IMG/VR virus record: IMGVR_UViG_3300028131_000823
Coordinates: 62,001 to 126,000 of that record
Strand: one strand, 5' to 3'
Length of the DNA stretch: 64,000 bases
This document shows, piece by piece, positions 1,842 through 61,113 of the stretch; position 1 is the first letter of the stretch; each line of letters opens with the position of its first letter. The notes below the pieces were generated by a model. The model had not been told where the DNA came from and did not search any database. It saw only the letters and a program-made list of their open reading frames with translations. A program made the position numbers and the translations under genes.

Positions 1842-1868
1842 GAAACAATCTCCTTTTTTAGTATATAA
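1842..1868 (+). promoter_or_regulatory. Middle-type promoter GAAACAA-N13-TATATAA overlapping a terminator hairpin
   Basis: One of 11 copies with an exact 13-nt spacer; overlaps the GGAGATTGT/ACAATCTCC hairpin. Confidence 0.7.
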
Positions 1869-1884
1869 GTTTTAAAATAACTAT

Positions 1885-2154
1885 ATGAAAAGTATACTAG
1901 AAGAAGCAGATCAAATTATCAATCACAGAAGCGAAGAAAAAGAAAGACAATATGGCCCTTTCAGCGAGGGTATGGATAGAGCAGCATCTATTTTCAATGG
2001 CATGACTGGCTTAGAAGTTACAGGCAGAGAAATGTACATGGCCCTAATAGCTCTTAAATTTTCAAGAGAAAGTTACAATCATAAAAGAGATAACCTCCTA
2101 GATGCAGTTGCGTATATTCAAGGATTAGACAATTACTTAAACGAAAAAGAATGA
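1885..2154 (+). CDS. DUF6378-like small helical protein (nucleotide-modification associated)
   Basis: SILEEADQII..R...YG and KFSRE..NHKRDNLLDAVAY pattern. Confidence 0.6.
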   Translation: MKSILEEADQIINHRSEEKERQYGPFSEGMDRAASIFNGMTGLEVTGREMYMALIALKFSRESYNHKRDNLLDAVAYIQGLDNYLNEKE

Positions 2155-3239
2155 AAATATTATTTACAGGCTGTACGGCCAAACAAACAGACGATGACGC
2201 TTGGAAAAGAGCAAGAGTTAAAAGAATAGATGATAGTAGTATTATCTGTAATTCATTAAGAAAACAAGGTTACACAGTAGACAGAAAGAAAGTTAAATGG
2301 GGAGATGATCTTTCAGAATATGGACTTGCTATTGTAGGCCTTGGTCAATTTGGTTCTAACAATTATTCAGGTGAAATCTTTAACGCATTATATGCAATTA
2401 ATGAATGTGATAATGTTTTAGTTTTTCATGAAGATTGGAAAATTGACGGTACTATGAAATCATTTAAATCAATGTTAGATGATGAAACTTACGAAAAGAC
2501 TATAGCAAAGAAATGGAGTGACGGGAGACACTTTTATGGTGGAGTTGATAATCAACACTTTAATAAAGATGTTGCAAGACAGGTTATACAAGACATGGTA
2601 GATGCAAAATATGACGCCATTATACCGGCATTCGATTGGGGTAATAAACAACTTGTTAGAGATATTATTGGTAGTAAAAATATTTATAATATAGACCTTA
2701 CTCCTTATGTCCTAGAGAATTGGAATATTTCAACAACATATACTTCTCAAATTAAAGAAAGAAAACATATGTTGGCTTCTCTTGTAAATCATAAGCCATG
2801 GGTAAATAGAAATAAATTATCATGGCCTGTAGATTATTTCGGTGCAAAGAGTATTAAAGAGGCAAAGCAGTTAAAAACTGAAACTGATGTTTTTGAAGCT
2901 TGTGGAAAGTATTGGAGTATTTTATGTCCTGAATATCCTCATGCAGGAAGTGGCTGGTTTAGAATTAGATGGGTTTATGCTGCAATACAAAGGTCAGTAT
3001 TACTTTCAAGTGAAAAAGATACAGAAGCATTAGGTCTTCCTAAAGTTAAAGTAGAATCATTAAGTAATACAGAATTAGAAGATTATGCAAATCAACTTTC
3101 AGAAACTGTACTTAGTTATATGTGGACAAAAGATGTATTTGATGTAAAAATAAAAGAGATAGTAGAAACAGTTGGAGAAAATCTTTCAATTAGTTCACAA
3201 CCTACCACTGGAATTAGTAAACAAACTGCGTTGTTTTAA
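2151..3239 (+). CDS. Putative GT-B glycosyltransferase (T4 beta-glucosyltransferase-like)
   Basis: 362 aa; two Rossmann-like halves (MKILFTG; VDYFGAK...SILCPEYPHAGSGWFRIRW); adjacent to dCTPase and DNA polymerase. Confidence 0.5.
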   Translation: MKILFTGCTAKQTDDDAWKRARVKRIDDSSIICNSLRKQGYTVDRKKVKWGDDLSEYGLAIVGLGQFGSNNYSGEIFNALYAINECDNVLVFHEDWKIDGTMKSFKSMLDDETYEKTIAKKWSDGRHFYGGVDNQHFNKDVARQVIQDMVDAKYDAIIPAFDWGNKQLVRDIIGSKNIYNIDLTPYVLENWNISTTYTSQIKERKHMLASLVNHKPWVNRNKLSWPVDYFGAKSIKEAKQLKTETDVFEACGKYWSILCPEYPHAGSGWFRIRWVYAAIQRSVLLSSEKDTEALGLPKVKVESLSNTELEDYANQLSETVLSYMWTKDVFDVKIKEIVETVGENLSISSQPTTGISKQTALF

Positions 3240-3262
3240 TAAAAATATAAAGAACAAAAGAA

Positions 3263-3727
3263 ATGGCAAACGAAGATAATCAATGTGCAGATTTAGAGGT
3301 TAAAGACCACTACTCAGAAGGTAAAGATACTTTCGGCATGATTTACAATAAACAAAGAGAATTGCAAAGTAGATTAGGTTTAAATTATGAAAACTTAACT
3401 CTTAAAGAAATTGCAGAAATGTGGATGGTAAATAAACATGCAATGTCAGATGAGCTTAATGAAATGTTTGATGCCTTAGGCGGTATTAATGATGGAATTG
3501 GTTCAGCTGCTTGGAAATATTGGAAACAGGATAATAAGAAAGCAGAAACAATGACAGTTGCAGATTTATCAGAAGCTGATAGGTTAGAATTATTTTATGA
3601 ATGGATCGATGGCCTTCATTTCTATATGAACTTTGCACTTGCAATTGGAATGACTAGTGAGGATATTGTCAACCTTTATATGGCAAAACAAAAAGAGAAT
3701 ATTAACAGACAAGAAAGAGGATATTAA
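3263..3727 (+). CDS. All-alpha dCTPase/dUTPase (T4 gp56 / dimeric dUTPase family)
   Basis: DELNEMFD...WKYWK...EWIDGLHF...YMAKQKENINRQERGY. Confidence 0.85.
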   Translation: MANEDNQCADLEVKDHYSEGKDTFGMIYNKQRELQSRLGLNYENLTLKEIAEMWMVNKHAMSDELNEMFDALGGINDGIGSAAWKYWKQDNKKAETMTVADLSEADRLELFYEWIDGLHFYMNFALAIGMTSEDIVNLYMAKQKENINRQERGY

Positions 3728-5127
3728 TGCTATTAGATATTGAACAACGAGATAAAGAAGTAATTGTAAGCTATTATAACACAGAAGGTGAAGTAGCCTT
3801 TAAAAGATACCCAGTTGGTCAATTTCAAAATTGGTATGTAACACATGACAAAGATCGTTACAGACATGAAAGCGCACAAAATTGGGATGGTCGACCTGTT
3901 AAATTATCAAATGCAAGACAATATAATAAATTTTCTTTGATCTATTTTATAGATCAACTTCCAGAAGCTGATAAAAAAGAAATACTTGCATATAATAAAC
4001 CAAGAACATATTTCGTAGACATTGAAACAGAGATTGTAGATGGCTTCCCTAAACCAGAAGAGGCTAAGACACGTATCCTGTCATTCTCTATCATTACACC
4101 AGAAAGAAAGGCTATAGTTTTAGGCTTAAAAGATTTGGATGATATGACAGGTATGCAAGATGATACTAACAAATATTTTAAATCATTGGATAGTGATTGG
4201 AGTCTATCATATTATAAGTTTAAGAATGAATATGATATGGTTTATAACTTTATTCATAAGTTTATGCCTAAGTTTCCAATGATGACAGGTTGGAACTTTA
4301 TTAATTATGATTGGCAATATATTGTTAACCGATGTAAGAGACTACAAATTGATATTAGTGAATCTGCAAAAACAGGTGCAGTTGATAGAATGGATGGCAG
4401 ACCACTTCATATGGGAATACTTGATTATATGCAATTGTATGATAAGTATGATCGTTCTGTAAAGGTTAAAGAATCAAATACCCTTGATTATGTTTCAGGT
4501 CAAATTGTAGGTCTTAAAAAGATTAAATACAATGGCGGCTTACAGGAATTGTATGAAAAAGATTTTAGAAAATATATTTATTATAACATTGTCGATTCAT
4601 GTTTGGTATATTATATAGATCAGAAGATTAAAGCAATGGATGTTCTTTTAACTCTTGCAAATATTACGCAAATGCCACTTTATAAAGCAGCAAGCCCAGT
4701 TGCTATGACAGAAGCATTAATGGCAAGAAAGCTTAAAGAACAAAATAAAATTATTGCAACTGAAAGAAGAGATGACAATAGAAAAGACGGTAGTTATGCC
4801 GGCGCTTTTGTTAAAGAACCAATCGTTGGTTTTTATAGTGGAGTAAGTGCATTTGACTTTGCTTCTCTATACCCTTCAATTATGCGACAATTTAATATTT
4901 CTCCTGATTCTTTTGTTGAAACTGTACAAAAACATGAGATAGAAGAAAAAAGAAAAAATAAAGATTATATTGTTTGTGAAAATGGCGCAGTCTATACAAC
5001 AGAAGATTCTGTCTTGAAAAGAATCCTCACCGACCTGTATAGTCAACGTAAGGAATATAAGGCAAAATCATTTGAATATTTTGAGAAGGCAAGATTAATT
5101 CGAAAAAAAATTAGTCAGCTAAAGTAG
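3727..5127 (+). CDS. Family B DNA polymerase, N-terminal subunit (3'-5' exonuclease, motif A, first fingers helix)
   Basis: DIETE exoI, GWNFINYDWQY exoII, YNIVDS exoIII, FDFASLYPS motif A; lacks motifs B and C. Confidence 0.92.
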   Translation: MLLDIEQRDKEVIVSYYNTEGEVAFKRYPVGQFQNWYVTHDKDRYRHESAQNWDGRPVKLSNARQYNKFSLIYFIDQLPEADKKEILAYNKPRTYFVDIETEIVDGFPKPEEAKTRILSFSIITPERKAIVLGLKDLDDMTGMQDDTNKYFKSLDSDWSLSYYKFKNEYDMVYNFIHKFMPKFPMMTGWNFINYDWQYIVNRCKRLQIDISESAKTGAVDRMDGRPLHMGILDYMQLYDKYDRSVKVKESNTLDYVSGQIVGLKKIKYNGGLQELYEKDFRKYIYYNIVDSCLVYYIDQKIKAMDVLLTLANITQMPLYKAASPVAMTEALMARKLKEQNKIIATERRDDNRKDGSYAGAFVKEPIVGFYSGVSAFDFASLYPSIMRQFNISPDSFVETVQKHEIEEKRKNKDYIVCENGAVYTTEDSVLKRILTDLYSQRKEYKAKSFEYFEKARLIRKKISQLK

Positions 5128-5268
5128 TCAACTTTTGGGAGGTTGAAGATATATAATCCATCAACAACTACACCCAATCAGATGATCAAAATTAGATCAT
5201 CTTTTGTTTTTTAACAGGTTATTAATGTAATAACCAGGAATGTAAAATTTAAAATATATTAAATAAAT

Positions 5269-6267
5269 ATGAATATTTTCAAAGAAAGAATAGAATACAA
5301 GCCATTTGAATATCCAGAATATTATACAGAAGGTTGGCTTCCACAGGCTCAAGCGTTTTGGTTACATACTGAAATTCCAATGCAGAGTGATATAAAAGAT
5401 TGGAAAGAAAACTTAATGCCACATGAAAGAAATCTTGTTGGTAATATTCTTTTAGGCTTTGCTCAAACTGAATGTGCTGTTAGTGATTATTGGACTACAA
5501 TGGTTACTCATTGGTTTCCAAAACATGAGATCAAACAAATGGCCATGATTTTTGGTAGCCAAGAAACTATTCACGCCACAGCCTATTCTTATTTAAATGA
5601 AACTTTAGGTCTTGAAGATTTTGCTGCATTCCTACATGAGCCATCAATGGCAGATAAGTTTGAACATCTTTCAGGAGTAGAAAATGATTATACACATGAG
5701 GATTTACAAAAGAATCCAGCAGCAAGAAGAGAAGTTGCAAGAAGTTTAGCAACATTTTCAGCATTTGCAGAAGGCGTAAGCCTTTATAGTTCATTTGCAG
5801 TCTTATATTCTTTTCAAATGAGAAACTTATTAAAGGGAATTGGTCAACAAATGAAATGGTCAGTTAGAGACGAATCATTACATTCAAAAATGGGTTGTAA
5901 ATTATTTAGACACATGTGTGATGAATATCCTGAACTTAGAGAAGAAGTTAAAAACGATGTAATAAGAGCTGCTGAGATTATGGTAGAAATGGAACATGCA
6001 TTTATTGATAAGATATTTGAAATGGGAAATCTTGAAAATCTTAAAGCAAACGATCTTAAAAACTTTATTTTAAGAAGAACAAATGAAAAACTTATTGAAT
6101 TAGGTTATAACCAACATTTTGAATTTGATACAGAATCAGCAAAAGAACTTGATTGGTTTTATCATTTAACAGGAGGAGTAGAACATAGCGACTTTTTTGC
6201 AATTAGACCAACTGCATATTCTAAAGCAGGTGAAGATGAGGTCTGGGACGAGGAGTCAATTTTTTAA
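5269..6267 (+). CDS. nrdB: Ribonucleotide reductase class Ia beta subunit
   Basis: QAFWLHTE, ETIHATAY, EGVSLYSSF, RDESLH diiron motifs. Confidence 0.95.
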   Translation: MNIFKERIEYKPFEYPEYYTEGWLPQAQAFWLHTEIPMQSDIKDWKENLMPHERNLVGNILLGFAQTECAVSDYWTTMVTHWFPKHEIKQMAMIFGSQETIHATAYSYLNETLGLEDFAAFLHEPSMADKFEHLSGVENDYTHEDLQKNPAARREVARSLATFSAFAEGVSLYSSFAVLYSFQMRNLLKGIGQQMKWSVRDESLHSKMGCKLFRHMCDEYPELREEVKNDVIRAAEIMVEMEHAFIDKIFEMGNLENLKANDLKNFILRRTNEKLIELGYNQHFEFDTESAKELDWFYHLTGGVEHSDFFAIRPTAYSKAGEDEVWDEESIF

Positions 6268-6278
6268 ATATATAAATT

Positions 6279-9430: not shown

Positions 9431-9492
9431 TTTTTATTGAAACAATATTAGTTTATTACATATAAATCTGTAAATAAACTAAATTATTCAAG

Positions 9493-10236
9493 ATGAAATT
9501 ACAAATCGATCGCATAGACCAGCATGCATTTACAAGTTTTGTTAATAGACTAAAGTTAATAGACTCTTTTATCTATTTCAAAATTAAAGATGGTCAAGTT
9601 ATCTCAACAGCTTACTTACCACAAAGAGACGCTGTAAAACACCATTCAGTCCCATTTGAAAGTATTTTTCAAACGGCCGAAGTACCTCAATTAGGTAAAG
9701 AATTAAAGGTTGCATTCTTCGATGCAGGTAGAATTATAGAAGCATTTAAACAATTTGAGCACGATGCAATTCGCTGCGAGATTGAATTCATAGAGAATGA
9801 ACAAGACTTAGTAGCTTCTACTTTTAGAATTTACAATGATGAGTTGGAAATTACTCTAGCATGTTCAGAGCCATCTCTAGGCTTTAAAGATCTTACACCA
9901 GATCAAATCGATGCAATATTTGCAAAAGCGCCAGATTCTTTTCAATTTGGAATTGATAACCACACTATCAATAAACTTAAATCTCTTTTTAATCTTGAAA
10001 AAGATGAGACATTCGATATTAAATCAAATGGAAAAGGTGTTGAAGTTAAAGGTAAGACATTTAATGTATTGGTTAGTCAATCACCAGAAGGAAATGGCGG
10101 CGCAACACTTTACAAAAAATACTTAACATTATTAGACAAGGAAGAGTACAACGTACACGTTTCTGCAAGCAAAGTTGTTTTTGATTCTAATGAGTCAGAT
10201 ACTTTATTAACAATATCAACTTGCCAAACAGCGTAG
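9493..10236 (+). CDS. Probable sliding clamp (gp45/PCNA-like)
   Basis: 247 aa with an alpha/beta pattern; first gene of the replication operon, directly before the PolB C-subunit. Confidence 0.6.
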   Translation: MKLQIDRIDQHAFTSFVNRLKLIDSFIYFKIKDGQVISTAYLPQRDAVKHHSVPFESIFQTAEVPQLGKELKVAFFDAGRIIEAFKQFEHDAIRCEIEFIENEQDLVASTFRIYNDELEITLACSEPSLGFKDLTPDQIDAIFAKAPDSFQFGIDNHTINKLKSLFNLEKDETFDIKSNGKGVEVKGKTFNVLVSQSPEGNGGATLYKKYLTLLDKEEYNVHVSASKVVFDSNESDTLLTISTCQTA

Positions 10237-16074: not shown

Positions 16075-17734
16075 TAGTATAGAATTTAAGAATTTTGCAA
16101 GTTATGGTAATCAAGTTCAAACAATTGAGTTTGAAGACCAAGCACAGTTATATTTAACATTAGGTAAAAACGGACATGGCAAAACCACAATAGCTAATAG
16201 TATTATATATGCACTATATGGAAAGGTTGAAGGTGTAAAACTCGCTGATTTGCCAAATAGAATCAACAAAGAATTATGGGTTAAAATAAACTTACAATGT
16301 AAAGACATGTCAGTTGAGATAGAAAGAGGTCTTATGCCAAATAAGTTTAAAGTATTAATCAATGGAGTAGAGTTTGATAAAGCAGGTAAAAAATCTGTAC
16401 AAGAATATTTAGAAGATGAAATTTTTGGAATACCATATCATGTGTTTAAGAATATTATTATTTTAAGTATTAATGATTTTAAGTCTTTTCTGACTATGAA
16501 TTCAAGTGATAAAAAACAAATCATTGATAAGATGTTTGGTTTTTCAGTTTTAAACGATATGTTCAGGAATGTTAAAGAAGAACGCAAGCAAATTAAAATG
16601 GAAATAGATTCTTATGATTCTGAACTTAATCAGATTATGGAATCAATTTCTTCAGTAAGACTTAAACTAAATAACTTAGTTGAAGAGTCTCATAAGAAAG
16701 ATAAAGCAAAGGTTGAAGCCTTAAAAGATGAACTATTAGAACATGGAGATAATGTTAAGAAATTAAACGAGGCGAGAAGCCATATCGATGGTAAAATTGA
16801 AGGAGTAAGAGATGAAGCAAGTAGTATGGGTATTCAGCAGCGAGACCTTGAACGAGAGAATCAATACCTACAGAAAAAAATTGAATTATACGAATCCGGT
16901 TTTTGTGGTTCATGTGAAACAAAGTTAGATACTGATTGGCACCAGAAAAAAGGAGATGAATTTAAAACACAGATTAAAAATAACTCTAAAAATTCAGGTA
17001 AATTAAAAGAAGAAATTACAATAGCTGAAGGAAAAGTAAGTGAATTAAGAAGTAAGAAAAAACAAGTTGAAACTAGAATTAATAACTTAAGGTACTCTAT
17101 TAAAGATATTAAAGAAGCTTTAATTAAAATAAAGGAATCAACTCAAGACTCAACTCAATTTCAACATTTAAAACAAATTATTGAAGAGTTTGAAAAGTCA
17201 GAAGAAAGCAAATCAGGTAAGAGAGAAGAGATAGCACAGCAAGATGCATTTATGACAATCTTAGAAGAAGTCTTAGGAGATGATGGTGTAAAAAACCTTG
17301 CAGTACAAACTATATTACCAGGCTTAAATGCTAATATCGCAATGATGGCTCAAACAATGCACCTTCCATTTCATATTAGATTTAATGAAAAGTTCGATTG
17401 TATTATTAATCATTTAGGGGAAGATATAAATCCTCTAACACTTTCAACAGGTGAAAGAAAGAAGGCTGACTTTATAGTTATTATTGCTATTATTAAAATA
17501 CTAAAACTAAGGTTTCCACAACTTAATCTTATGTTCTTAGATGAGTTATTAAGTTCTGTAGATCAAGATGGAGTCTATAACGTACTTAAAATTCTTAATG
17601 AAGTAATTAAAGAAAACGGACTAAATACATTTGTGATTAATCATACGGAATTACCTCATGAGATCTTTGATCAGAAAATACAGATTCATAGAGAGAATGG
17701 ATTTTCAAAGTTTACTATTGAAAAAATAGAATGA
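16064..17734 (+). CDS. Rad50/SbcC-like ATPase (gp46)
   Basis: GKNGHGKT, CGSC zinc hook, LSTGE signature, LDE. Confidence 0.92.
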   Translation: MRINSIEFKNFASYGNQVQTIEFEDQAQLYLTLGKNGHGKTTIANSIIYALYGKVEGVKLADLPNRINKELWVKINLQCKDMSVEIERGLMPNKFKVLINGVEFDKAGKKSVQEYLEDEIFGIPYHVFKNIIILSINDFKSFLTMNSSDKKQIIDKMFGFSVLNDMFRNVKEERKQIKMEIDSYDSELNQIMESISSVRLKLNNLVEESHKKDKAKVEALKDELLEHGDNVKKLNEARSHIDGKIEGVRDEASSMGIQQRDLERENQYLQKKIELYESGFCGSCETKLDTDWHQKKGDEFKTQIKNNSKNSGKLKEEITIAEGKVSELRSKKKQVETRINNLRYSIKDIKEALIKIKESTQDSTQFQHLKQIIEEFEKSEESKSGKREEIAQQDAFMTILEEVLGDDGVKNLAVQTILPGLNANIAMMAQTMHLPFHIRFNEKFDCIINHLGEDINPLTLSTGERKKADFIVIIAIIKILKLRFPQLNLMFLDELLSSVDQDGVYNVLKILNEVIKENGLNTFVINHTELPHEIFDQKIQIHRENGFSKFTIEKIE

Positions 17735-17744
17735 TATATAATAA

Positions 17745-20025: not shown

Positions 20026-20097
20026 AAAATTAAATAAAATTTGACGTTAAACTACAAATCTCTCATTTAACTCAAATACAGTAGAAAAGATCAATTG

Positions 20098-20124
20098 GAA
20101 ACAATTGATCTTTTTTTTATATAA
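20098..20124 (+). promoter_or_regulatory. Middle-type promoter driving the gp55-like sigma
   Basis: GAAACAA-N13-TATATAA overlapping an AAAAGATCAATT/AATTGATCTTTT hairpin. Confidence 0.7.
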
Positions 20125-20142: not shown

Positions 20143-20526
20143 ATGCCAAGAAAAAAGAATTATTTAAACAATAAAGACTTATATGCACAAATTGTACAAT
20201 CGTTAGATGATGATAGATTAACAAGAGATGCAGAGAAAATGTTACAGTTACTTGCTGAAAAAGCAATTAATAGATTAACTTATGTAAATGAAGATGATAG
20301 AAAAGATTGTTTGCAATTCGCTCTATTAGATTTATTAAAATATTGGAGAAACTTTAACCCTAAATATACAAACGCATTTGCATACTTTACTGAAATTGCA
20401 AAAAGAGGTTATGCTAAAGGTTGGAATAAGCTTCATCCAAATAAAACAAAGGGAACTATCTCAATGGATAGAATAAATTCTGCAAACTCAAGAGAAGATG
20501 GCGGAGGCGGAATGTTTAATATCTAA
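20143..20526 (+). CDS. Late-transcription sigma factor (gp55-like)
   Basis: NYLNNKDL...D.LQFALLDLLKYWRNFNPK..NAFAYFTEI. Confidence 0.85.
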   Translation: MPRKKNYLNNKDLYAQIVQSLDDDRLTRDAEKMLQLLAEKAINRLTYVNEDDRKDCLQFALLDLLKYWRNFNPKYTNAFAYFTEIAKRGYAKGWNKLHPNKTKGTISMDRINSANSREDGGGGMFNI

Positions 20527-21586: not shown

Positions 21587-21627
21587 AAAAAATTGAATAT
21601 ATAAATTTATAAACGATATAAGAAATT

Positions 21628-23232: not shown

Positions 23233-23252
23233 AAATAGATGATATATAAACT

Positions 23253-28635: not shown

Positions 28636-28723
28636 AAAACAAGAGTATATATTGAAAAGGTAAAAATATTTGAAACAATTTATTTAATTATCATATAATA
28701 ATAGTTAAATTAAACACACAAAT

Positions 28724-30588: not shown

Positions 30589-30864
30589 ATGCATAATAAA
30601 AACACAACCATCGATAAAGTAGCTTTAGAATTATTTAATAAACACTACAGTGAATTAAATAAGACTAAACAATTCGAATGTAATCAAGAAATGGTAAACA
30701 ATCCAAAATGGCTAGCTCCTTTCTGGAAGCAGCCAATTTATAAATCAGAAACTCAAAAAATTTGGGATGAAATAATTAACCATGCAAATAAAGCGGGTAA
30801 GGTAGTAGATTGTGGAGCTTGTAAAAACAACGGATGCATCGTTTGTGAAGAAACAAATCATTAA
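30589..30864 (+). CDS. Hypothetical early protein with C-terminal CxxC..CxxC
   Basis: CGAC...CIVC. Confidence 0.6.
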   Translation: MHNKNTTIDKVALELFNKHYSELNKTKQFECNQEMVNNPKWLAPFWKQPIYKSETQKIWDEIINHANKAGKVVDCGACKNNGCIVCEETNH

Positions 30865-30894
30865 TAAATCATATAATAACTAAACAAAAAATAA

Positions 30895-38889: not shown

Positions 38890-38950
38890 AATACTCTAGA
38901 TTTAGGTAGATATATAGATTATAAAAACTAAAAAAAAATAGATAAAAATT

Positions 38951-41275: not shown

Positions 41276-41320
41276 AAAGAAATTTTAAAGATATATAATT
41301 AAAAATAAAAGAAAAACAAA

Positions 41321-41958: not shown

Positions 41959-42153
41959 ATGTCAAAGGAAGACTACATAGTAAACAAATTAATTAAAAAA
42001 ATTCAAGTGCTTTTAACAGAACCTGAGTTTGAAGAATTAAATCACATTATATTAAGTAAGGCAATGGCTGAAAAACAAAGGCCTAAATCTGTTAGTGCTT
42101 TTGTAAGAGATTTAATACAGAAAGAAATTAAAAAAAATTCTGAAACAAAATAA
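41959..42153 (+). CDS. Possible ribbon-helix-helix protein
   Basis: KIQVLLT strand, helix, then SVSAFVRDLIQKEI. Confidence 0.45.
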   Translation: MSKEDYIVNKLIKKIQVLLTEPEFEELNHIILSKAMAEKQRPKSVSAFVRDLIQKEIKKNSETK

Positions 42154-42186
42154 AAAACAATTATATAATCTAACAAACACATCAAC

Positions 42187-46400: not shown

Positions 46401-46720
46401 ATGCAATCGAAGCACTCGGTGATGATTTAATAGAAGCAGTCGAAAAACTTGCATTAATGATAGCAGACTTTGGAGGAACAGTTGAAGAAGCAAGAGAAGG
46501 TAATCAATCATTTATAGATGGAGCAATAGACACTATTAAATCTGGAGCTAAAACTCTTTTCGGAGGAGGTTTTAGTTCAGGAGGAGGAAGTACATCGAAT
46601 TCACAAAGCACTGTTGTTAACAACACAGATCAATCTGCCCTTCTTGCTGAAATTAAAAGACTACAAAATATTTTAATGTCAGGTGAAGCTACATTCCAAG
46701 TAGAAAGTAACGCGTTTTAA
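43463..46720 (+). CDS. Tape measure protein
   Basis: 1085 aa, Ala/Gly/Leu-rich hydrophobic repeats; follows the chaperone; late motif at 43433. Confidence 0.8.
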   Translation: MSAFKSPFEKLSYEAQREIADSVQPGGAMYDLLEDIADNINQLNARESEVKRVSLFGGLTIKEALAWKFLGEKGLKAIGEGFGAIADVIDGMKTGGDEAKEKMEAIASGLEAIKGLGKAIFEFAGYLLLATPLLMIGVLAAPLFALSLFIITMALSFAAKPLADKQTQEALVAMGDIGMGLLKLGGSLLVFALISPFAIIGVIAAFIVISTLGLAFKVLDALGITDDMEKMAKALAMTGLAILSLGVSLALFRLMHPSEMELLKLSVAVGLTIIGFALAFGIIGIFKDEIMDGAYALMLTGLAIVVLGLSMYLFNMALQGIDDKWEFLLQLGITLGGLGLVMFVIGKDAEGVAMGAGAMIVAGIAIIAIAIGVKIFSSAIEGLDSPWEFLAQVGVTVAGLGLAMAGAGLIAPMIALGAGAMILAGGALIAIAIGVKLMSKVFEGNAWANMVADSGRVTESTLGFGGGRPMSNLEVLMTAIGYSFMWNPFQAIGIAGGAGAMLLAGAAMVSIGKGIEKFQGLSIDYDTFPDQLSTLTNTLAETFGKIGEDYGGAGLFGLGGGLVYQGIQSVMGMGNALSSIAYGMSKMAKLEFPTYNPDGSVKEIITLNSGTMKTINENVADMVSSLATAFGDIGKKYPSKSAGGVMGFLGFTKENPVTAGIRAVSGMGGAIGGIANGMKDMAALKFNVYGDPSKPEKITEIIDLTKGDMLKKVGDNIMKLVSTLVDGFAAIGKTYKDWRTAGDAARGLSLAQEMGPILGDIVQSMSEFAKGGMEEVPKKINEFLVEFAKNLQELAKVDGSAVKSVGNGIEWFFDAFQDEQEGIDVMIAMGKEADALNNVSSFIEKIGAVPATITKTADAIKTMSISMPKMSLLFLGDATDFVEESGKFGNHVIVGRAIKDITNSMVTLGEVNVEGFPTMLDFIEDLEDIDLSDIKKDLRHVAKSYQMIGETTNSLDIEAIVETSNMFKALAYLSEQGGEDAIEALGDDLIEAVEKLALMIADFGGTVEEAREGNQSFIDGAIDTIKSGAKTLFGGGFSSGGGSTSNSQSTVVNNTDQSALLAEIKRLQNILMSGEATFQVESNAF

Positions 46721-46749
46721 ACAAATTTCTTTTTTCATATATAAATAGT

Positions 46750-50174: not shown

Positions 50175-50262
50175 TTGTTCATAACTTTTTGAAAAAAGTT
50201 GCCTCTAGATTTTTTTATGTCAAAGATTATAGTTATATTAGTATTATAATTAAAACTTAAAC
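50175..50262 (+). promoter_or_regulatory. Early promoter repeat, copy 4
   Basis: Conserved core with a variant -33 region. Confidence 0.75.
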
Positions 50263-50972: not shown

Positions 50973-51025
50973 AAATTTTCACGGGTCAAAGATTATAGTT
51001 ATATTAGTATTATAAATTTAAAACG
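50958..51025 (+). promoter_or_regulatory. Early promoter repeat, copy 5
   Basis: Conserved core. Confidence 0.8.
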
Positions 51026-51500: not shown

Positions 51501-51536
51501 TAAACAATATTAATTTTATTCATATAATATAAAGAA

Positions 51537-51880: not shown

Positions 51881-51945
51881 AAAAAAAGTGTTAAAAAGTT
51901 TTCACGGGTCAAAGATTATAGTTATATTAGTATTATAATTAAAAC
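51881..51945 (+). promoter_or_regulatory. Early promoter repeat, copy 6
   Basis: Conserved core before the ligase gene. Confidence 0.8.
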
Positions 51946-51956
51946 AAAGATAAAAT

Positions 51957-54983: not shown

Positions 54984-55730
54984 ATGGCACATATACAATG
55001 GGGCGGATATAAATGGCGTCCAAGAGAAAAATGGGGAACATATCACCCTGACAAAACATATTGCTATTATGATAGAAGCGCAATAGAAATAAATGAAAAG
55101 GACGAAATGATCTTAAAGACTCAAATGAATCCAAAAACATTTAAAGGCAAGTCACTTCATTATAATTCAGAATTAACAGAGCTTGAAATTCCAATAGGAG
55201 TAGGTTTAGTATCAAGCGTTGATGGCTTTGGCTATGGATATTTTGAAATAGAAGCTAAGTTACCAACAGGTAAGAATCTATGGCCTGCATTTTGGATGAG
55301 TCCATTTGAAAGTTGGCCACCTGAAATTGATGTCTTTGAGGCTTATTCAAAAAACAAAGAACACTTTTTTCATTTTAATCTTTTTAATCCATTTGGCTTT
55401 TGGAGAGTTGAAACTAATTTTCACTGTGGAAAGCAACCCGATAATTATAATTTAGGAGCAAAGACACATTGGCTAGGTTGGAAAAATCCAGCAAAACACT
55501 TTAATAAATTTGGATGTTTATGGACTGAAGATGTGATTAAAATATTTTATAATGATAGACTAGTTAGAGAGCTTAAAGATCCAAAGTTATTAGATGAATA
55601 TCGTGGTAAATCAATGAATGTAAAAATAAATGCACATGTTGATGCAGGTGTAGATGTAAACAATCACCCTACTTCAGAATATGTTGTAAGAAATTTTAAA
55701 TATAAATCTTTATCAGAGTTAAACAATTAA
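54984..55730 (+). CDS. GH16 glycoside hydrolase (laminarinase-like)
   Basis: YGYFEIEAKLP.G...WPAFWM, EIDVFE catalytic motif. Confidence 0.88.
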   Translation: MAHIQWGGYKWRPREKWGTYHPDKTYCYYDRSAIEINEKDEMILKTQMNPKTFKGKSLHYNSELTELEIPIGVGLVSSVDGFGYGYFEIEAKLPTGKNLWPAFWMSPFESWPPEIDVFEAYSKNKEHFFHFNLFNPFGFWRVETNFHCGKQPDNYNLGAKTHWLGWKNPAKHFNKFGCLWTEDVIKIFYNDRLVRELKDPKLLDEYRGKSMNVKINAHVDAGVDVNNHPTSEYVVRNFKYKSLSELNN

Positions 55731-55751
55731 TTTTTTTAGTATATAATAAAC

Positions 55752-55919
55752 ATGGAAGAAGCTGAATACAACAAGATAGAAATAGAAATTTTAAAGGAAA
55801 TGGAAAGCCTATTAGCGAGTGAAACTAATACTTCCAATTTAAAAGAAATACAAGGACTAAGAGAAAAACTTAGGAAATTAAGATTAGAGAACTTAGATAA
55901 GTCAAACATTCGTAATTAA
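55752..55919 (+). CDS. Small coiled-coil protein (55 aa, not in ORF track)
   Basis: Follows the middle-type promoter at 55720-55746. Confidence 0.55.
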   Translation: MEEAEYNKIEIEILKEMESLLASETNTSNLKEIQGLREKLRKLRLENLDKSNIRN

Positions 55920-58015: not shown

Positions 58016-58128
58016 TGACATTTTTCGAATTCACATTTCAATCAATATGGCACTTTCTCGGAATGGTGCTACTAATTTCTATCGTGGGCAATACCGTCCT
58101 TGATTTAATAAAAATTTTTAAGAAATAA

Positions 58129-58216
58129 TTGTTAATAACTTTTAGGAAAAAAGTGCCTAAAAGTTTTCACGGGTCAAAGATTATAGTTATATTAGTATTA
58201 TAATTAAAACTTAAAC
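58129..58216 (+). promoter_or_regulatory. Early promoter repeat, copy 7
   Basis: Conserved core. Confidence 0.8.
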
Positions 58217-58408
58217 ATGACAAACATAATCGACACTTGGACTAAAAAAGAATTTTTACAGGTAATGAGCGACGCCTATAAAGACGCACACGGGATTAGA
58301 CCTAGAGGAATTAAATATTCTGAATGGTCTTTAGCAGAACTTAAAGATGAGTTCTTAATGCTGTGTTCAATCGCAGCCGAAAATGAACAGTGGGATAGAG
58401 AACATTAA
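58217..58408 (+). CDS. Small hypothetical early protein
   Basis: SDAYKDAHGIRPRG motif; follows the early repeat. Confidence 0.65.
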   Translation: MTNIIDTWTKKEFLQVMSDAYKDAHGIRPRGIKYSEWSLAELKDEFLMLCSIAAENEQWDREH

Positions 58409-58409
58409 A

Positions 58410-58495
58410 TTGTTCATAACTTTTGAAAAAAAGTGCCCAAAAAATTTCACGGGTCAAAAATTATAGTTATATTAGTATTATAAATTAAAAACGTA
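58410..58495 (+). promoter_or_regulatory. Early promoter repeat, copy 8 (drives the ECF sigma)
   Basis: Conserved core. Confidence 0.8.
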
Positions 58496-58508: not shown

Positions 58509-59117
58509 ATGCCAAAAACAAAAATCACTTACAGAGAATTAGCAGAAAACTTCGTAGCAACAAGATCACATAAAGATTATAATGCAATTTACAATAGAGT
58601 AAAGCCAGGTCTTAAAACTTATATCTACAAAATAGTAAAAGACAACAGTATCGCAAGCGACTTAACATCAAATGTGCTAATTAAACTGTGGACTAAAATC
58701 GATCAATATAAACCAGAATGGCAAATTACAACATGGTTATACAAGATCGCATTCAATGAAGCCCTAGGTTATATTAAAGAAAGAAACAAAAAATCATCAC
58801 TTGATCAACTAAGAGAATTCGGTGTGCAAGTAGGTGATGATGGTATTATTAATGGTTCTGCAAATGGACTCTTAATGGAATACGAACAAAAAACTGAAAA
58901 TGACTACATTGAAGAAGACGAAGAGCTTATGCAAAAATACGAAAGTGCACTTAAAGCAATTGTAGATCTTAAGCCAATGTACAAAGAAATCATGGAAGAT
59001 AGACTTTTAAAAGGTATGAAATATGAAGACATTTCTGCAAAACATAAGGTCAATTTACAAACAGTTAAAAACAGAATCCGTAGAGGTAAAACATTAATCG
59101 CAGAAAAAATATCATAA
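58509..59117 (+). CDS. ECF-type (group 4) sigma factor
   Basis: Region 2 ASDL...V.IKLW....Y......TWLYKIA.N; region 4 GMKYEDIS......TVKNRIRRG. Confidence 0.88.
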   Translation: MPKTKITYRELAENFVATRSHKDYNAIYNRVKPGLKTYIYKIVKDNSIASDLTSNVLIKLWTKIDQYKPEWQITTWLYKIAFNEALGYIKERNKKSSLDQLREFGVQVGDDGIINGSANGLLMEYEQKTENDYIEEDEELMQKYESALKAIVDLKPMYKEIMEDRLLKGMKYEDISAKHKVNLQTVKNRIRRGKTLIAEKIS

Positions 59118-59139
59118 TCTTAAATCTTAAAAAAATAAA

Positions 59140-59388: not shown

Positions 59389-59429
59389 TAGGATATATAA
59401 ACAAATCTAAAACATAACATATAATAAAC

Positions 59430-59714
59430 ATGGAAGAACAAACACATATTTTAGACATTTTAATAGAAAAAATATCTAAAGGATTAGATAAAGATGTTAA
59501 AGTTTACTTAGCAATGGATGACGATAAAAAGGAATTACTTGCTATAAAAAAAGGAGATGATGAAAGAGGCTTAGACCTTGCACAAATAGTCAACTCTTAT
59601 GGATTTTATAGAATTTATCAAGCAGATTCTGAAGAAGAAGCACTAGATAAATTAGCTGAAGGACTTGTTAAGTCTATAACAAATATGTTAGAGACAGAAA
59701 ATTCTGAAAAATAA
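59430..59714 (+). CDS. Hypothetical protein
   Basis: Preceded by both late and middle motifs. Confidence 0.6.
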   Translation: MEEQTHILDILIEKISKGLDKDVKVYLAMDDDKKELLAIKKGDDERGLDLAQIVNSYGFYRIYQADSEEEALDKLAEGLVKSITNMLETENSEK

Positions 59715-59720
59715 AAAGAT

Positions 59721-59794
59721 GGGGGTATAGCTCAGTTGGCTAGAGCGCCTGCCTTGCACGCAGGAGGCCGTGGGTTCGAATCCCTCTACCTCCA
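59721..59794 (+). tRNA. tRNA-Ala(UGC)
   Basis: Cloverleaf GGGGGTA/TACCTCC with G3:U70, discriminator A, anticodon TGC; no encoded CCA. Confidence 0.92.
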
Positions 59795-59805
59795 CTATCT
59801 TAATT

Positions 59806-60636
59806 ATGAAAAATCTTATATTAACCGCTAGTCTTGGAGATAGACCTTTTAAAAAATATGCGTTCTTTTCAATGGAAGAATATGCTAAAAAAACAAATGC
59901 AGATTTTATAGTAGCAGAAGATATAGAAATTCCAAAAGAATTAAAAGAACTAAAAGTAGGTAGAGGAAATAATACATCGTATTTAAAAAAGATACTGTGG
60001 ATAAGAAAATATTTAAAAGAATACGATAAAGTATTATGGCTAGATGACACATGTTACGTGAATCCAAATTGTCCAAATTTATTTAATTTTGTTCCAAGTG
60101 GATATGTGGCAGCTGCTTCTGAATCTCAATTAATGTATGTTGGCTTTAAAGAAGCATATAAGGATTTTTTAAAAAGGTGGACCATTTATAAAAACGAAAG
60201 AGACACTACATTTAATACAGGTGTTATTTTATATACTAAAGAGTGTAAACATATGTTTAGTAATGATAATTTACTAAATACAATTGCTAAATTGTGTTTG
60301 ACTTCTCAATGGCCACAACAATTACTTACAAACTATTTGATAATAATTAATAATATTCCAAGAATTGTTTTAGATTCTAAATTTAATAGAATGCATATAT
60401 GTGAAAAATACGAACCATATATAGAAAGACGCGAATTAATTAGTGAGAAAGAAGGTAAAATAAAAGACGTGTCAGATGAATTTTTTAAAAAAAATTTTAA
60501 ATTTAATAAAAAGCTTTTAAAACAAGATCCATTTGTATATGAGGCATTTATATATCACCTTGCAGGAAAATCAAAAGAAGTTAGAGAAAACCTTCTTAAA
60601 CAAATACATAAAACTTTTTCAAAAGTAAAAATATGA
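59806..60636 (+). CDS. GT-A glycosyltransferase (GT8/GT34-like)
   Basis: YAKKTNADF, YDKVLWLDD, FNTGVILY, QQLL. Confidence 0.7.
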   Translation: MKNLILTASLGDRPFKKYAFFSMEEYAKKTNADFIVAEDIEIPKELKELKVGRGNNTSYLKKILWIRKYLKEYDKVLWLDDTCYVNPNCPNLFNFVPSGYVAAASESQLMYVGFKEAYKDFLKRWTIYKNERDTTFNTGVILYTKECKHMFSNDNLLNTIAKLCLTSQWPQQLLTNYLIIINNIPRIVLDSKFNRMHICEKYEPYIERRELISEKEGKIKDVSDEFFKKNFKFNKKLLKQDPFVYEAFIYHLAGKSKEVRENLLKQIHKTFSKVKI

Positions 60637-61064
60637 AAATAGGAATTACATGTTCAACATTTGACCTTTTACATGCAGGTCATATTAAAATGCTAGAAGA
60701 AGCCAAGAGTCAATGTGACTACCTAATATGTGCTCTTCAAACAGATCCAACAATTGACAGACCAGGTACAAAAAATAAGCCAATTCAATCTTTAGTAGAA
60801 AGGTTTATTCAATTAGAAGGTTGTAGTTACGTGGATAAAATATTACCATATCAAACTGAGAAAGACTTAATTGATATTTTTAGTTCATTTAAACTTGATG
60901 TAAGAATTATAGGTGGAGAATATTTTGGCAAGGAATTTACAGCAAAAGACATTTGTGAAAAAAGAGGTATTGAAATCTTTTACAACAAAAGAGATCATGG
61001 GTTTTCAAGCACTGAATTAAGAAATAGAATTTTTGAATTAGAACTTAAAAAAAGAAACAAATAA
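60633..61064 (+). CDS. TagD-like cytidylyltransferase
   Basis: TFDLLHAGH (HxGH), ER...L....YVD, FSSTELR. Confidence 0.88.
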   Translation: MKIGITCSTFDLLHAGHIKMLEEAKSQCDYLICALQTDPTIDRPGTKNKPIQSLVERFIQLEGCSYVDKILPYQTEKDLIDIFSSFKLDVRIIGGEYFGKEFTAKDICEKRGIEIFYNKRDHGFSSTELRNRIFELELKKRNK

Positions 61065-61113
61065 AAACTTCTTTATATAATATTAGTAAATTAATAAAAA
61101 TAAAACATAAATT

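What the first reader, a model, noticed from the sequence alone, without database searches (positions are those of the whole stretch)
1842..61080. Middle-promoter class KAAACAA-N13-YATATAA, probably read by the phage ECF sigma: a three-tier cascade
Seen: 11 intergenic copies with an invariant 13-nt spacer, at 1842, 9439, 20098, 28672, 30850, 42142, 46718, 51501, 55720, 59398 and 61054. They precede the GT/dCTPase/PolB operon, the clamp-PolB-uvsX-helicase operon, the clamp loader, the mini-AlaRS operon and the gp55-like late sigma. The ECF sigma (58509) itself sits behind an early-type repeat. Known: ECF sigmas commonly read an AAC-containing -35, whereas T4 uses MotA/AsiA for middle transcription. 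Inference: host sigma transcribes the ECF sigma, which transcribes gp55, which drives late genes. This would be a sigma relay in a T4-like genome.
Basis: partly seen in the sequence, partly recalled or inferred. Interest (0 to 1): 0.72.

Follow-up and report, generated by a model that had tools for sequence, protein, structure and literature searches.

The report
Phage sigma-factor relay with three promoters
An uncultured marine T4-like phage, probably of flavobacteria, carries three sharply distinct promoter types wired as a relay (host sigma to a phage ECF-type sigma to a phage gp55-type sigma to structural genes), so it appears to replace T4's MotA/AsiA middle-gene switch with a sigma factor of its own.

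Summary
All 11 sites exist, all on the + strand (0.02 expected). The core is (G/T)AAAC-N16-ATATAA: 32 genome-wide at spacer 16 against 1-5 at any other spacer. These sites precede replication, recombination and nucleotide-metabolism genes, tRNAs and the gp55-like late sigma (20143-20526), never recognisable structural genes. A second box, GATATATA(A), with no upstream element, precedes portal, protease, neck/terminase, sheath and tube genes. An ~85-nt repeat with a Bacteroidota sigmaA-like -7 box (TATATTAG) precedes ORFans, ligase and the ECF-type sigma (58509-59117). This wiring is conserved: 46 of 46 distinct gp55 upstream regions in relatives keep GAAAC-N16-(A/G)TATAA. The motif tracks the sigma. 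It is enriched in two distant lineages whose sigma keeps the region 4.2 helix (one only 39% identical), and is absent from two sigma-less Tenacibaculum phages and from a lineage with a different helix. The residues aligned with sigmaE's -35 contacts (K, N, R) fit GAAAC. No MotA/AsiA was found. Corrections: the gene behind 61054 is an Hc1 histone-like gene, and the -10 (ATATAA) is atypical for ECF sigmas. Verdict: a new variant of the known phage sigma cascades.

The parts
1842..1868 (+). Class A (middle) promoter. Its -35 GAAAC lies in the loop of a terminator hairpin (about 1828-1859). It heads the 89-aa ORF, the 362-aa ORF, the NTP pyrophosphohydrolase and the PolB N-terminal half.
9439..9465 (+). 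Class A promoter heading the probable sliding clamp, PolB C-terminal half, UvsX, DnaB-like helicase and SbcD/SbcC.
20084..20124 (+). Terminator hairpin (GATCAATTG/CAATTGATC plus T8) fused with the class A promoter at 20098-20124. GAAA forms the loop. It heads the gp55-like gene and is conserved in 46/46 distinct relatives' regions, with compensatory stem changes.
20143..20526 (+). gp55-like late sigma (127 aa).
   Evidence: phrog_234 at 2.1e-10; homologs in PTm1, pT24, LR756500.1, G001 and G002
28672..28698 (+). Class A promoter heading two ORFs of unknown function (171 and 164 aa).
30850..30876 (+). Class A promoter heading the clamp loader and an exonuclease.
42142..42168 (+). Class A promoter heading a 334-aa ORF (phrog of unknown function).
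46718..46744 (+). Class A promoter heading the KTSC-domain ORF and the AlaRS-core fragment operon.
51501..51527 (+). Class A promoter heading a 74-aa membrane-like ORF.
55720..55746 (+). Class A promoter heading a 55-aa ORF (ATG 5 nt after the box) and guanylate kinase.
58127..58210 (+). Early repeat (stem-loop plus T-run, GTCAAA-N9-TATATTAG) heading a 63-aa ORF.
58408..58492 (+). Early repeat directly upstream of the ECF-type sigma gene.
   Evidence: an equivalent element lies upstream of the sigma in relatives
58509..59117 (+). ECF-type (group IV) sigma factor, 202 aa. It is the only Sigma70_r2 hit in the contig.
59392..59424 (+). Overlapping class B box (59392-59400) and class A promoter (59398-59424). 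They head a 94-aa ORF, tRNA-Ala, a GT8 glycosyltransferase and a cytidylyltransferase.
61054..61080 (+). Class A promoter heading the Hc1 histone-like gene, tRNA-Thr, a 163-aa ORF and a PD-(D/E)XK nuclease.
17733..17741 (+). Class B (late) box GATATATAA ahead of the gp15-like tail sheath stabiliser.
   Evidence: (weak Pfam hit, below cut-off)
21596..21605 (+). Class B variant GAATATATAA ahead of the portal gene. It is GATATATA in most relatives.
23241..23249 (+). Class B box ahead of the 114-aa ORF / prohead protease / major head protein block. A second box, GATATATAC, lies at 23618.
38909..38917 (+). Class B variant GATATATAG ahead of the tail sheath gene.
41290..41298 (+). Class B box ahead of the tail tube gene.

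Best explanation
The motif is the middle-promoter class of this phage, best written (G/T)AAAC-N16-ATATAA.

I infer that it is read by host core RNA polymerase carrying the phage's own ECF-type sigma (58509-59117). Region 4.2 of the sigma would read GAAAC at -35, and region 2 would read (C/T)ATATA at about -12 to -7.

The relay would run in three steps:
- Host sigmaA reads the early repeat (T-run, GTCAAA-N9-TATATTAG) and makes the ECF sigma together with ORFan early genes.
- The ECF sigma turns on about 30 promoters. These head replication, recombination and nucleotide-metabolism genes, tRNAs, an Hc1 histone-like gene and the gp55-like sigma.
- The gp55-like sigma, which lacks a -35-reading domain, reads the -10-only box GATATATA(A) ahead of head, neck, terminase and tail genes.

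The gp55 gene is insulated from upstream late transcription by a terminator whose loop is the -35 element.

Shown here: the three motif classes, their statistics, strand and position bias, their gene sets, their conservation in relatives, the co-occurrence of motif and sigma, and the residue pattern of the sigma. Inferred: which protein reads which motif, the timing, and the leaderless start sites.
For: Motif reality:
- 11 sites against 0.02 expected.
- Spacer 16 gives 32 sites against 1-5 at other spacers, and + against - is 32 to 1.
- Only 2 of 32 sites overlap a strong hairpin, so terminators do not explain the motif.

Regulon:
- PolB halves, UvsX, helicase, SbcCD, clamp loader, gp55, guanylate kinase, NTP pyrophosphohydrolase, dCMP deaminase, gp32-like SSB, DNA methyltransferase, and tRNA-Ala, Thr, Glu and Gln.
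- This matches the T4 middle-gene definition (PMC2988021).
- No recognisable structural gene lies behind a class A site.

Conservation:
- 46/46 distinct gp55 upstream regions keep GAAAC-N16-(A/G)TATAA while the flanks and hairpin stems diverge.
- In 51 distinct relatives' loci there are 62 class A and 133 class B hits on the coding strand and 0 on the other.
- Relatives with sigma at 60-72% identity keep A, B and an early-type element before the sigma gene.

Link to the sigma:
- It is the only sigma-domain gene in the contig besides gp55.
- The closest solved relative is E. coli sigmaE.
- At sigmaE's base-contact positions R171/S172/R176 (PMC1540707) the phage sigma has K/N/R.
- The helix LQT(V/I)KNRIRRGK is invariant down to 52% identity.
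- The helix is kept as QTVKNRIARGRK in LR756500.1 (39% identity), whose genome has 38 AAAC-N16-ATATAA sites on its coding strand against 6, with controls of 6-7.
- G001 (52% identity) has GAAAC-N17-TATAA at 15 against 2, with controls 1/2.
- PTm1 and pT24 lack the sigma and show no enrichment.
- G002, with a different helix, shows none for GAAAC-N17-TATAA (1/1 against 2/1).

Geometry: this matches the ECF promoters described in PMC5758882, with sigmaW tGAAACnTTTt and spacers of 14-17 bp.

Rival machinery: no MotA_activ, MotCF or AsiA hit above cut-off.
Against: - There is no transcript, start-site or binding evidence of any kind.
- The -10 ATATAA is unlike the CGT-type -10 of most ECF sigmas, including the flavobacterial ECF motif (PMC9723704; PMC5758882).
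- The -10 cores of classes A and B are nearly the same sequence in the same inferred register. A single reader for both, or cross-reading, is therefore not excluded.
- Co-occurrence of motif and sigma is confounded with relatedness, because the lineages that keep both are also the closest by tail sheath.
- G002 shows some excess for AAAC-N16-ATATAA (7+7 against 1+3), so the 'different helix, no motif' point is not clean.
- The contig is estimated at 75% complete, so a MotA/AsiA-like gene or another regulator could lie in the missing part or be too diverged for Pfam.
- The host is inferred, not known.
Confidence: 0.7

Rival explanations
1. A T4-style activator mechanism. The upstream KAAACAA box is bound by a phage (or host) DNA-binding activator that works with a host sigma reading the ATATAA -10, as MotA/AsiA do in T4. 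The ECF-type sigma would then serve some other, smaller set of promoters.
For: The formal geometry resembles a MotA box: a 7-9 bp box lying 12 +/- 1 bp from the -10, against 13 bp here (PMC2988021). The -10 is A/T-rich, not ECF-like CGT. Many early ORFans have no assigned function and could include such a factor. The contig is only about 75% complete.
Against: No MotA_activ, MotCF or AsiA match was found. The inferred host-type sigmaA box TAnnTTTG fits the early repeat (TATATTAG) but not YATATAAT. The box contains the ECF hallmark AAC at ECF spacing. The sigma's contact residues fit GAAAC and track the motif across lineages. No other over-represented motif is left for the ECF sigma to read.
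Confidence: 0.15
2. Classes A and B are read by one and the same phage sigma through the shared ATATA -10 core. Either the ECF sigma also uses GATATATAA as an extended -10, or the gp55-like protein reads both and is helped at class A sites by an upstream factor. The cascade would then have two tiers, not three.
For: Aligned on the frequent ATG 5 nt (A) or 3 nt (B) downstream, both boxes place nATATA at -12 to -7 and differ mainly at -12 (Y against G) and at -6 to -4. The two boxes overlap physically at 59392-59424 and 46718-46744. nrdB/nrdA lie behind a class B box, so the functional split is not perfect.
Against: Class B has no upstream conservation at all. The classic T4 late box TATAAATA is not strand-biased here (30 against 26), which leaves class B as the only candidate target for the gp55-like protein. 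The gene sets behind A and B separate cleanly into replication against virion genes.
Confidence: 0.08
3. The motif is read by a host ECF sigma that infection stress induces, and the phage-encoded sigma is redundant or has another role.
For: Flavobacteria carry several ECF sigmas (7 in F. psychrophilum; PMC9723704). AAC-type -35 boxes are common to the whole group (PMC1540707).
Against: The flavobacterial ECF motif mapped so far has a CGT -10. The motif tracks the presence and helix of the phage sigma across phage lineages. Sigma-less phages of related hosts lack it.
Confidence: 0.05

Closest known systems
Bacillus phage SPO1 sigma cascade (host sigmaA, then gp28, then gp33/gp34)
   Same: It is a three-tier temporal relay in which a phage sigma made from host-type early promoters switches on middle genes, including the factor(s) for late transcription (summarised in PMC13401047; the details come from my general knowledge).
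   Different: SPO1 is not T4-like. Its late factors are not gp55-type. Here the middle sigma is a two-domain ECF-type protein, and the late step uses the T4 gp55 lineage with a -10-only box.
T4 middle and late transcription (MotA/AsiA sigma appropriation, then gp55/gp33/gp45)
   Same: The genome type is the same, the middle regulon has the same content (replication, recombination, nucleotide metabolism, tRNAs, late-switch factors), and the late promoter logic is -10-only (PMC2988021 and PMC2988020). The upstream box is at a similar distance from the -10.
   Different: No MotA or AsiA was found. The upstream box is an ECF-type GAAAC, not TGCTT. The -10 does not match the inferred host sigmaA box. 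The late box is GATATATA(A), not TATAAATA. A gp33 homolog was not searched for.
phiEco32 / phage 7-11 phage-encoded sigma (podoviruses)
   Same: A small phage-encoded sigma redirects host core polymerase to phage-specific middle/late promoters that were found as over-represented intergenic motifs (PMC4331800).
   Different: Those promoters are single compact boxes (tAATGTAtA, TGATGT..TATA) without a separate -35. The phages are unrelated podoviruses and have no gp55-type second sigma.
'Group 2' jumbo phages with both minimal and fuller sigma factors (Iyer et al. 2021)
   Same: That survey already notes that T4-like jumbo phages can carry a minimal (gp55-like) sigma together with a more complete sigma (PMC7824862).
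   Different: It is a gene-content statement only. It defines no promoters, wiring or cascade, and it calls the fuller sigmas RpoD-like, whereas this one is ECF-type (r2 plus r4_2 only).
PeSL promoter-early stem-loop cassettes of T4-type phages
   Same: The early repeat here is a near-identical stem-loop/T-run plus promoter cassette. It is repeated 11-13 times ahead of small ORFan genes, like PeSLs (PMC2839356 and PMC4122927).
   Different: The sequence is unrelated. The promoter box is Bacteroidota-like (TATATTAG), not sigma70-like. A role in gene shuffling was not tested.

Membership tests
ECF (group IV) sigma factor, for the 58509-59117 protein | Has sigma regions 2 and 4 and lacks regions 1.1 and 3 | tested here: met
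   Pfam Sigma70_r2 (residues 27-93) and Sigma70_r4_2 (147-195) only, in a 202-aa protein. The best solved relatives are sigmaE, sigmaH and sigmaW.
ECF (group IV) sigma factor, for the 58509-59117 protein | Cognate promoter has an AAC-containing -35 and a spacer of 14-17 bp | tested here: met
GAAAC-N16-ATATAA (or N15 to YATATAA), with a sharp spacer preference. The reference values come from PMC5758882 and PMC1540707.
ECF (group IV) sigma factor, for the 58509-59117 protein | -10 element of the CGT type | tested here: not met
   The -10 is (C/T)ATATAA. CGT is typical but not universal, so this argues for an unusual specificity, not against membership of the protein family.
ECF (group IV) sigma factor, for the 58509-59117 protein | Co-transcribed anti-sigma factor and autoregulatory promoter | tested here: not met
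   The downstream 82-aa ORF has no Pfam or PHROG match and no HxxxCxxC motif. The sigma gene is preceded by the early repeat, not by class A. A phage relay would not need either feature.
ECF (group IV) sigma factor, for the 58509-59117 protein | Binds core RNA polymerase and directs initiation at its promoter | not testable with these tools
   This needs in vitro transcription or ChIP.
T4 gp55-type late sigma, for 20143-20526 | Homology to gp55 (region 2-like only, no -35-reading domain) | tested here: met
   phrog_234 'late sigma transcription factor' at 2.1e-10 over residues 3-93 of a 127-aa protein. Homologs are found in T4-like Tenacibaculum phages.
T4 gp55-type late sigma, for 20143-20526 | Late promoters consist of a -10 box only, upstream of virion genes | tested here: met
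   GATATATA(A): 33 on + against 3 on -, with no upstream conservation. It lies ahead of the portal, protease, neck/terminase, sheath and tube genes and is syntenically conserved. The box sequence differs from T4's TATAAATA.
T4 gp55-type late sigma, for 20143-20526 | Works with the gp33 co-activator and the gp45 sliding clamp | not tested
   A probable clamp at 9493-10236 rests on a language-model lead only. No gp33 search was made.
T4 MotA/AsiA sigma appropriation | Genome encodes MotA (activation and DNA-binding domains) and AsiA | tested here: not met
   PF09114 gave only a 13.6-bit sub-threshold hit inside nrdA. PF09158 and PF09010 gave none. The contig is about 75% complete, so absence is not absolute.
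T4 MotA/AsiA sigma appropriation | Middle promoters combine a host-sigma -10 with a MotA box (TGCTT) 12 +/- 1 bp upstream | tested here: not met
   The box is GAAAC(A/T)(A/T), and the -10 YATATAA does not match the Bacteroidota sigmaA box TAnnTTTG. The host assignment is inferred.
Bacteroidota sigmaA-type promoter, for the early repeat | -7 box TAnnTTTG, with a T-rich/TTTG element about 19-21 bp upstream | tested here: inconclusive
   TATATTAG has one mismatch, and the box is TATATTTG in relative L003. The upstream element is only a T-run (TTTTC / TTTTTTTATG). The reference consensus is from PMC9723704.

The most novel reading that the evidence does not exclude
A widespread family of marine T4-like phages of Bacteroidota has replaced sigma appropriation with a dedicated ECF-type middle sigma of a new specificity: GAAAC at -35 and an A/T-only ATATA -10 in place of CGT.

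This sigma and the gp55-type late sigma would read almost the same -10 core in the same register. In that case promoter class is set by the presence of the -35 box and by one base at -12 (pyrimidine for middle, G for late).

Many of these transcripts would be leaderless. At key nodes, gp55 among them, the -35 is built into the loop of the upstream terminator, which makes a single compact stop-and-restart element.
Probability: 0.35. Interest if true: 0.75.

Novelty: new variant of a known kind. Interest (0 to 1): 0.62.

Why it matters
T4 is the textbook case of a phage that reprograms host RNA polymerase without a conventional middle sigma. How the many T4-like phages that lack MotA/AsiA time their middle genes is largely unknown.

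This family appears common. The sigma has at least 857 homologs in marine metagenomes, and the gp55 gene has at least 488 related viral contigs. It offers a fully specified and directly testable answer:
- three short promoter consensus sequences;
- two small phage sigmas;
- conserved wiring between them.

It would also give a natural ECF sigma/promoter pair with an unusual A/T-only -10, which is of interest for orthogonal expression tools in Bacteroidota, where standard promoters do not work. The three motifs can also be used straight away to assign temporal classes to the many unannotated genes of these uncultured phages.

Tried and rejected
(1) RNA evidence. 

(2) Terminator artefact. I considered that GAAACAA plus a T-rich spacer might just be terminator hairpins, because the gp55 and 1842 sites are. 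I rejected this: only 2 of 32 sites have a strong hairpin.

(3) Sigma70-type reading. GAAACA as a poor TTGACA gives a spacer of only 14-15 bp to the -10 hexamer, and the likely host does not use TTGACA/TATAAT. Rejected by inspection.

(4) Early repeat as a sigma70-like promoter (TTCACG-N16-TATATT). The TTCACG part is not kept at constant spacing in relatives, whereas GTCAAA-N9-TATATTAG is. I therefore prefer the Bacteroidota -7 box reading, but it is not proven.

(5) gp55 wiring in LR756500.1. No class A site lies directly upstream of its gp55. The gene seems to sit inside an operon, with the nearest site about 4 kb upstream. That wiring is not shown outside the family and G001.

(6) Anti-sigma. 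The 82-aa ORF after the sigma gave no match in Pfam or PHROGs.

(7) Nearest annotated phages. A DNA search found only tRNA and cytidylyltransferase fragments, so there is no close cultured relative.

(8) PHROG and Pfam scans of most early-repeat genes and several class B genes returned nothing. Their temporal class rests on the promoter alone.

Full report
**What the window is**

The window is bases 62001-126000 of a single 204,977-bp viral contig. The contig comes from IMG/VR, is linear, and CheckV estimates it at 75% complete. G+C is 30.8%, and 239 of 265 candidate ORFs lie on the + strand.

The core genes are T4-like:
- PolB split into two halves, UvsX, a DnaB-like helicase, SbcD/SbcC and a clamp loader.
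- A gp55-like factor.
- Portal, prohead protease, major head protein, large terminase, tail sheath and tail tube.

By tail sheath, the nearest records are:
- the 462-kb uncultured phage LR756500.1, at 47% identity;
- Tenacibaculum phages PTm1, PTm5 and pT24, Flavobacterium phage MaF61, the Lak phages and Sphingomonas phage PAU, all at 31-36%.

Several features point to a Bacteroidota host, probably a marine flavobacterium:
- an Hc1 histone-like gene;
- a sigma homolog binned in a Flavobacteriales MAG;
- depletion of Shine-Dalgarno motifs, at 5.7% of genes against 13% of random 15-mers, with A-rich start contexts. This is as described for Bacteroidetes in the abstract of PMC6847099.

The host is inferred, not shown.

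**The observation**

The pattern KAAACAA-N13-YATATAA finds exactly the 11 reported sites, all on the + strand, against 0.02 expected. There are 17 in the whole contig, again all +.

Relaxing the pattern shows what carries the signal. AAAC-Nx-ATATAA occurs 32 times on the + strand at x = 16, against 1-5 times at every other spacer from 8 to 25, and 0-3 times on the - strand.

The position-specific counts give (G/T)AAAC(A/T)(A/T)t...(C/T)ATATAA(T):
- The base before AAAC is G in 15 sites, T in 12, A in 5 and C in 0.
- The base before ATATAA is T in 15 sites, C in 13, A in 2 and G in 2.

**Three promoter classes, not one**

TATATAA occurs in 46 intergenic regions, more than class A can account for. 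Aligning all intergenic ATATAA boxes separates a second class, GATATATA(A):
- 33 copies on + against 3 on -.
- No conserved base upstream of it.

A third element is an ~85-nt near-identical repeat present in 11-13 copies:

AATTGTTaATAACTtTTGAAAAAAAGTG-N8-TTTTCACGGGTCAAAGATTATAGTTATATTAGTATTATAATTAAAAC

It ends 21-26 nt before an ATG. It begins with a stem-loop (AACTTTT...AAAAGTT) followed by a T-run.

**Gene sets behind each class**

Early repeats precede:
- small ORFans (244, 30589, 49447, 50266, 58217);
- a PNKP-type phosphatase (51033);
- an ATP-dependent DNA ligase (51957);
- the ECF-type sigma (58509).

Class A precedes:
- NTP pyrophosphohydrolase plus the PolB N-terminal half;
- a probable clamp plus the PolB C-terminal half, UvsX, helicase and SbcCD;
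- the gp55-like gene;
- clamp loader plus an exonuclease;
- the KTSC / AlaRS-fragment operon;
- guanylate kinase;
- the tRNA-Ala / glycosyltransferase / cytidylyltransferase group;
- Hc1, tRNA-Thr and a PD-(D/E)XK nuclease;
- outside the window: dCMP deaminase, a gp32-like SSB (two tandem sites), a glycosyltransferase, a DNA methyltransferase and a tRNA-Glu/tRNA-Gln pair.

Class B and its one-base variants precede:
- a gp15-like sheath stabiliser (a weak Pfam hit);
- portal;
- the protease / major head protein block;
- the neck and terminase block;
- sheath and tube;
- a 1085-aa ORF.

The class A set is what T4 calls middle genes: replication, recombination, nucleotide metabolism, tRNAs and the factors that switch on late transcription (PMC2988021). 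One oddity is that nrdB/nrdA lie behind a class B box at 5148.

**Conservation**

The sigma has 857 homologs at E < 1e-5, mostly from marine metagenomes, some on contigs of 145-250 kb.

In three relatives whose sigma is 60-72% identical, classes A (as TGAAAC-N16-ATATAA) and B are present around the sigma gene. The sigma gene is preceded by a related early element, T-run + ATGTCAAA-N9-TATATT(A/T)G. The same holds in a group at 52% identity.

For gp55, 69 related viral contigs gave 46 distinct upstream regions:
- All 46 carry GAAAC-N16-(A/G)TATAA.
- 37 carry the exact AAAC-N16-ATATAA.
- In these regions GAAAC sits in the loop of a hairpin. The stem changes by compensatory substitutions (GATCAATTG, GCCCATT, GGGCTAAAT, GCCCG...) and is followed by a T-run.

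This is a terminator fused to the promoter. The stem is conserved as structure, while the loop and the -10 are conserved as sequence at fixed spacing.

In the phage itself only two sites (1842 and 20098) have such a hairpin, so the motif is not a by-product of terminators.

Across 51 distinct gp55-portal loci there are 62 class A and 133 class B hits on the coding strand and none on the other. The class B hits fall in syntenic positions.

**Does the motif belong to the sigma?**

Four lines of evidence bear on this.

First, the protein is a two-domain ECF-type sigma. It is the only Sigma70_r2 match in the contig.

Second, the geometry is right. ECF promoters have an AAC-containing -35 and spacers of 14-17 bp. 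For sigmaW the -35 is tGAAACnTTTt (PMC5758882).

Third, residues. The crystal structure of sigmaE region 4 on GGAACTT shows three base-specific contacts (PMC1540707):
- R176 contacts the G two bases 5' of AAC.
- Residue 172 contacts the next base, with Ser pairing with G and Thr with A across ECF sigmas.
- R171 contacts the G opposite the C of AAC.

In the HMMER alignment to 1OR7 (chain index = native numbering + 3) the phage sigma reads T-V-K-N-R-I-R-R-G against T169-V-R171-S172-R-I-F-R176-A. That places K, N and R at the three contact positions. An Asn facing an A, a conserved Arg facing the G/T, and a Lys facing the G opposite C are all compatible with GAAAC. This step is an inference from alignment.

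Fourth, phyletic pattern:

| Lineage | Sigma | Region 4.2 helix | Motif counts |
|---|---|---|---|
| Own family, down to 52% identity | present | LQT(V/I)KNRIRRGK, invariant | enriched |
| LR756500.1 | 39% identical, large insertion in region 4 | QTVKNRIARGRK | AAAC-N16-ATATAA: 38 on coding strand, 6 on the other, controls 6-7 |
| G001 | 52% identical | same helix | GAAAC-N17-TATAA: 15 against 2, controls 1/2; its gp55 follows a terminator and then AAAC-N16-GTATAA |
| PTm1, pT24 | none | - | no enrichment; their gp55 genes follow a terminator but no such motif |
| G002 | 34% identical | DTIKTLIRQSR | GAAAC-N17-TATAA: 1/1 against 2/1; a small excess for the looser pattern |

This correlation is partly confounded by relatedness, but it goes the right way in every lineage examined.

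**Rivals**

- *T4-style activator plus host sigma.* It is weakened by the absence of MotA/AsiA matches and by the poor fit of YATATAAT to the Bacteroidota sigmaA box TAnnTTTG (PMC9723704). The early repeat's TATATTAG fits that box much better.
- *A single reader for classes A and B.* It is made unlikely by gp55 lying behind class A, by gp55-type proteins having no -35-reading domain (PMC2988020), and by the clean split of gene sets.
- *A host ECF sigma.* It is possible but does not explain why the motif follows the phage sigma.

**Weak points**

- No start sites or binding data exist.
- ATATAA is an atypical ECF -10.
- The two phage -10 boxes are nearly identical, so cross-reading cannot be excluded.
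- Host and timing are inferred.

**Extra features of the architecture**

Thirteen of the 32 class A sites have an ATG 5-6 nt after ATATAA (nine at exactly 5). Six class B sites have an ATG 3 nt after the 9-mer. This implies many leaderless mRNAs.

If the A of the ATG is taken as +1, both boxes are in the same register: Y(-12)ATATA(-7)A for class A and G(-12)ATATA(-7)TAA for class B. Leaderless mRNAs are rare (5.5%) in Flavobacterium itself.

At 59392-59424 a class B box and a class A promoter overlap, so that the end of the late box supplies the -35 TAAAC.

**Comparison with what is known**

- Phage sigma cascades are classical (SPO1).
- Small phage sigmas reading phage-specific boxes are known (phiEco32 and 7-11; PMC4331800).
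- A survey has noted that T4-like jumbo phages may carry both a minimal and a fuller sigma (PMC7824862).
- Repeated early promoter/stem-loop cassettes are known as PeSLs (PMC2839356 and PMC4122927).
- I found no description of these three consensus sequences, of an ECF-type middle sigma in a T4-like phage, or of this wiring. The library searched is limited to open-access papers and preprints.

**Verdict**

I rate it a new variant of a known kind, with about 0.7 confidence that the ECF-type sigma is the reader of the motif.

Noticed in passing
window 3727-5127 and 10237-11445: The family B DNA polymerase is split into two genes about 5 kb apart, with nrdB/nrdA and a 406-aa ORF between them. The N-terminal half matches phrog_262 positions 76-495 and the C-terminal half positions 499-840. 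Each half lies in a different class A operon.
   Followed up: partly
window 61114-61296: A 60-aa Hc1 histone-H1-like protein (PF07432, E 1.3e-22) is encoded behind a class A promoter. A homolog sits in the same place in relative L002. This is a chromatin-compacting protein family in a phage middle regulon.
   Followed up: partly
window 47133-47984: A 283-aa protein matches only the first 189 positions of the class II alanyl-tRNA synthetase core (PF01411, 6e-23). It is transcribed behind class A site 46718 together with a KTSC-domain ORF.
   Followed up: partly
window 20084-20124 and 1828-1868; loci L005-L084: These are terminator-promoter fusions. The -35 GAAAC forms the loop of a strong hairpin (dG about -15 to -17 kcal/mol), and the terminator's T-run is the promoter spacer. 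The gp55 copy is conserved in 46 distinct relatives with compensatory stem changes.
   Followed up: yes
genome-wide; in the window for example 55720-55754 and 59398-59432: 13 of 32 class A sites have the ATG 5-6 nt after ATATAA, and 6 class B sites have it 3 nt after the 9-mer. This suggests frequent leaderless mRNAs, which are rare (5.5%) in Flavobacterium itself.
   Followed up: partly
window 59392-59424 (also 46718-46744): Late and middle promoters overlap physically. In GATATATAAACAA..., the 3' end of the class B box supplies the class A -35. At 46736 the class A -10 extends to CATATATAA.
   Followed up: no
window 189-236, 30534-30580, 49392-49440, 50210-50260, 50977-51025, 51900-51950, 58127-58210, 58408-58492: The early repeat is an ~85-nt near-identical cassette (stem-loop, T-run, then promoter) ahead of ORFan genes. 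It resembles the PeSL mobile regulatory cassettes of T4-type phages. In two copies outside the window (genome 140 and 154303) the middle is replaced by a GC-rich hairpin plus T7.
   Followed up: partly
window 5148-8114: The ribonucleotide reductase genes nrdB/nrdA lie behind a class B (late-type) box with a 112-nt leader, not behind class A. This is unexpected for nucleotide-metabolism genes.
   Followed up: no
whole contig: Shine-Dalgarno-like 4-mers are depleted upstream of start codons (5.7% of genes against 13% of random 15-mers) and the start contexts are A-rich. About 90% of ORFs are on one strand.
   Followed up: partly
LR756500.1 (locus L089, ORF 1306-2067 on the - strand): The sigma homolog of this 462-kb phage carries an insertion of about 50 residues inside region 4, between the helix preceding the HTH and the recognition helix. 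It still keeps the recognition helix, and the genome keeps the same promoter motif.
   Followed up: partly
The two tRNA genes in the stretch may be the cause, but I did not probe this.
   Followed up: no
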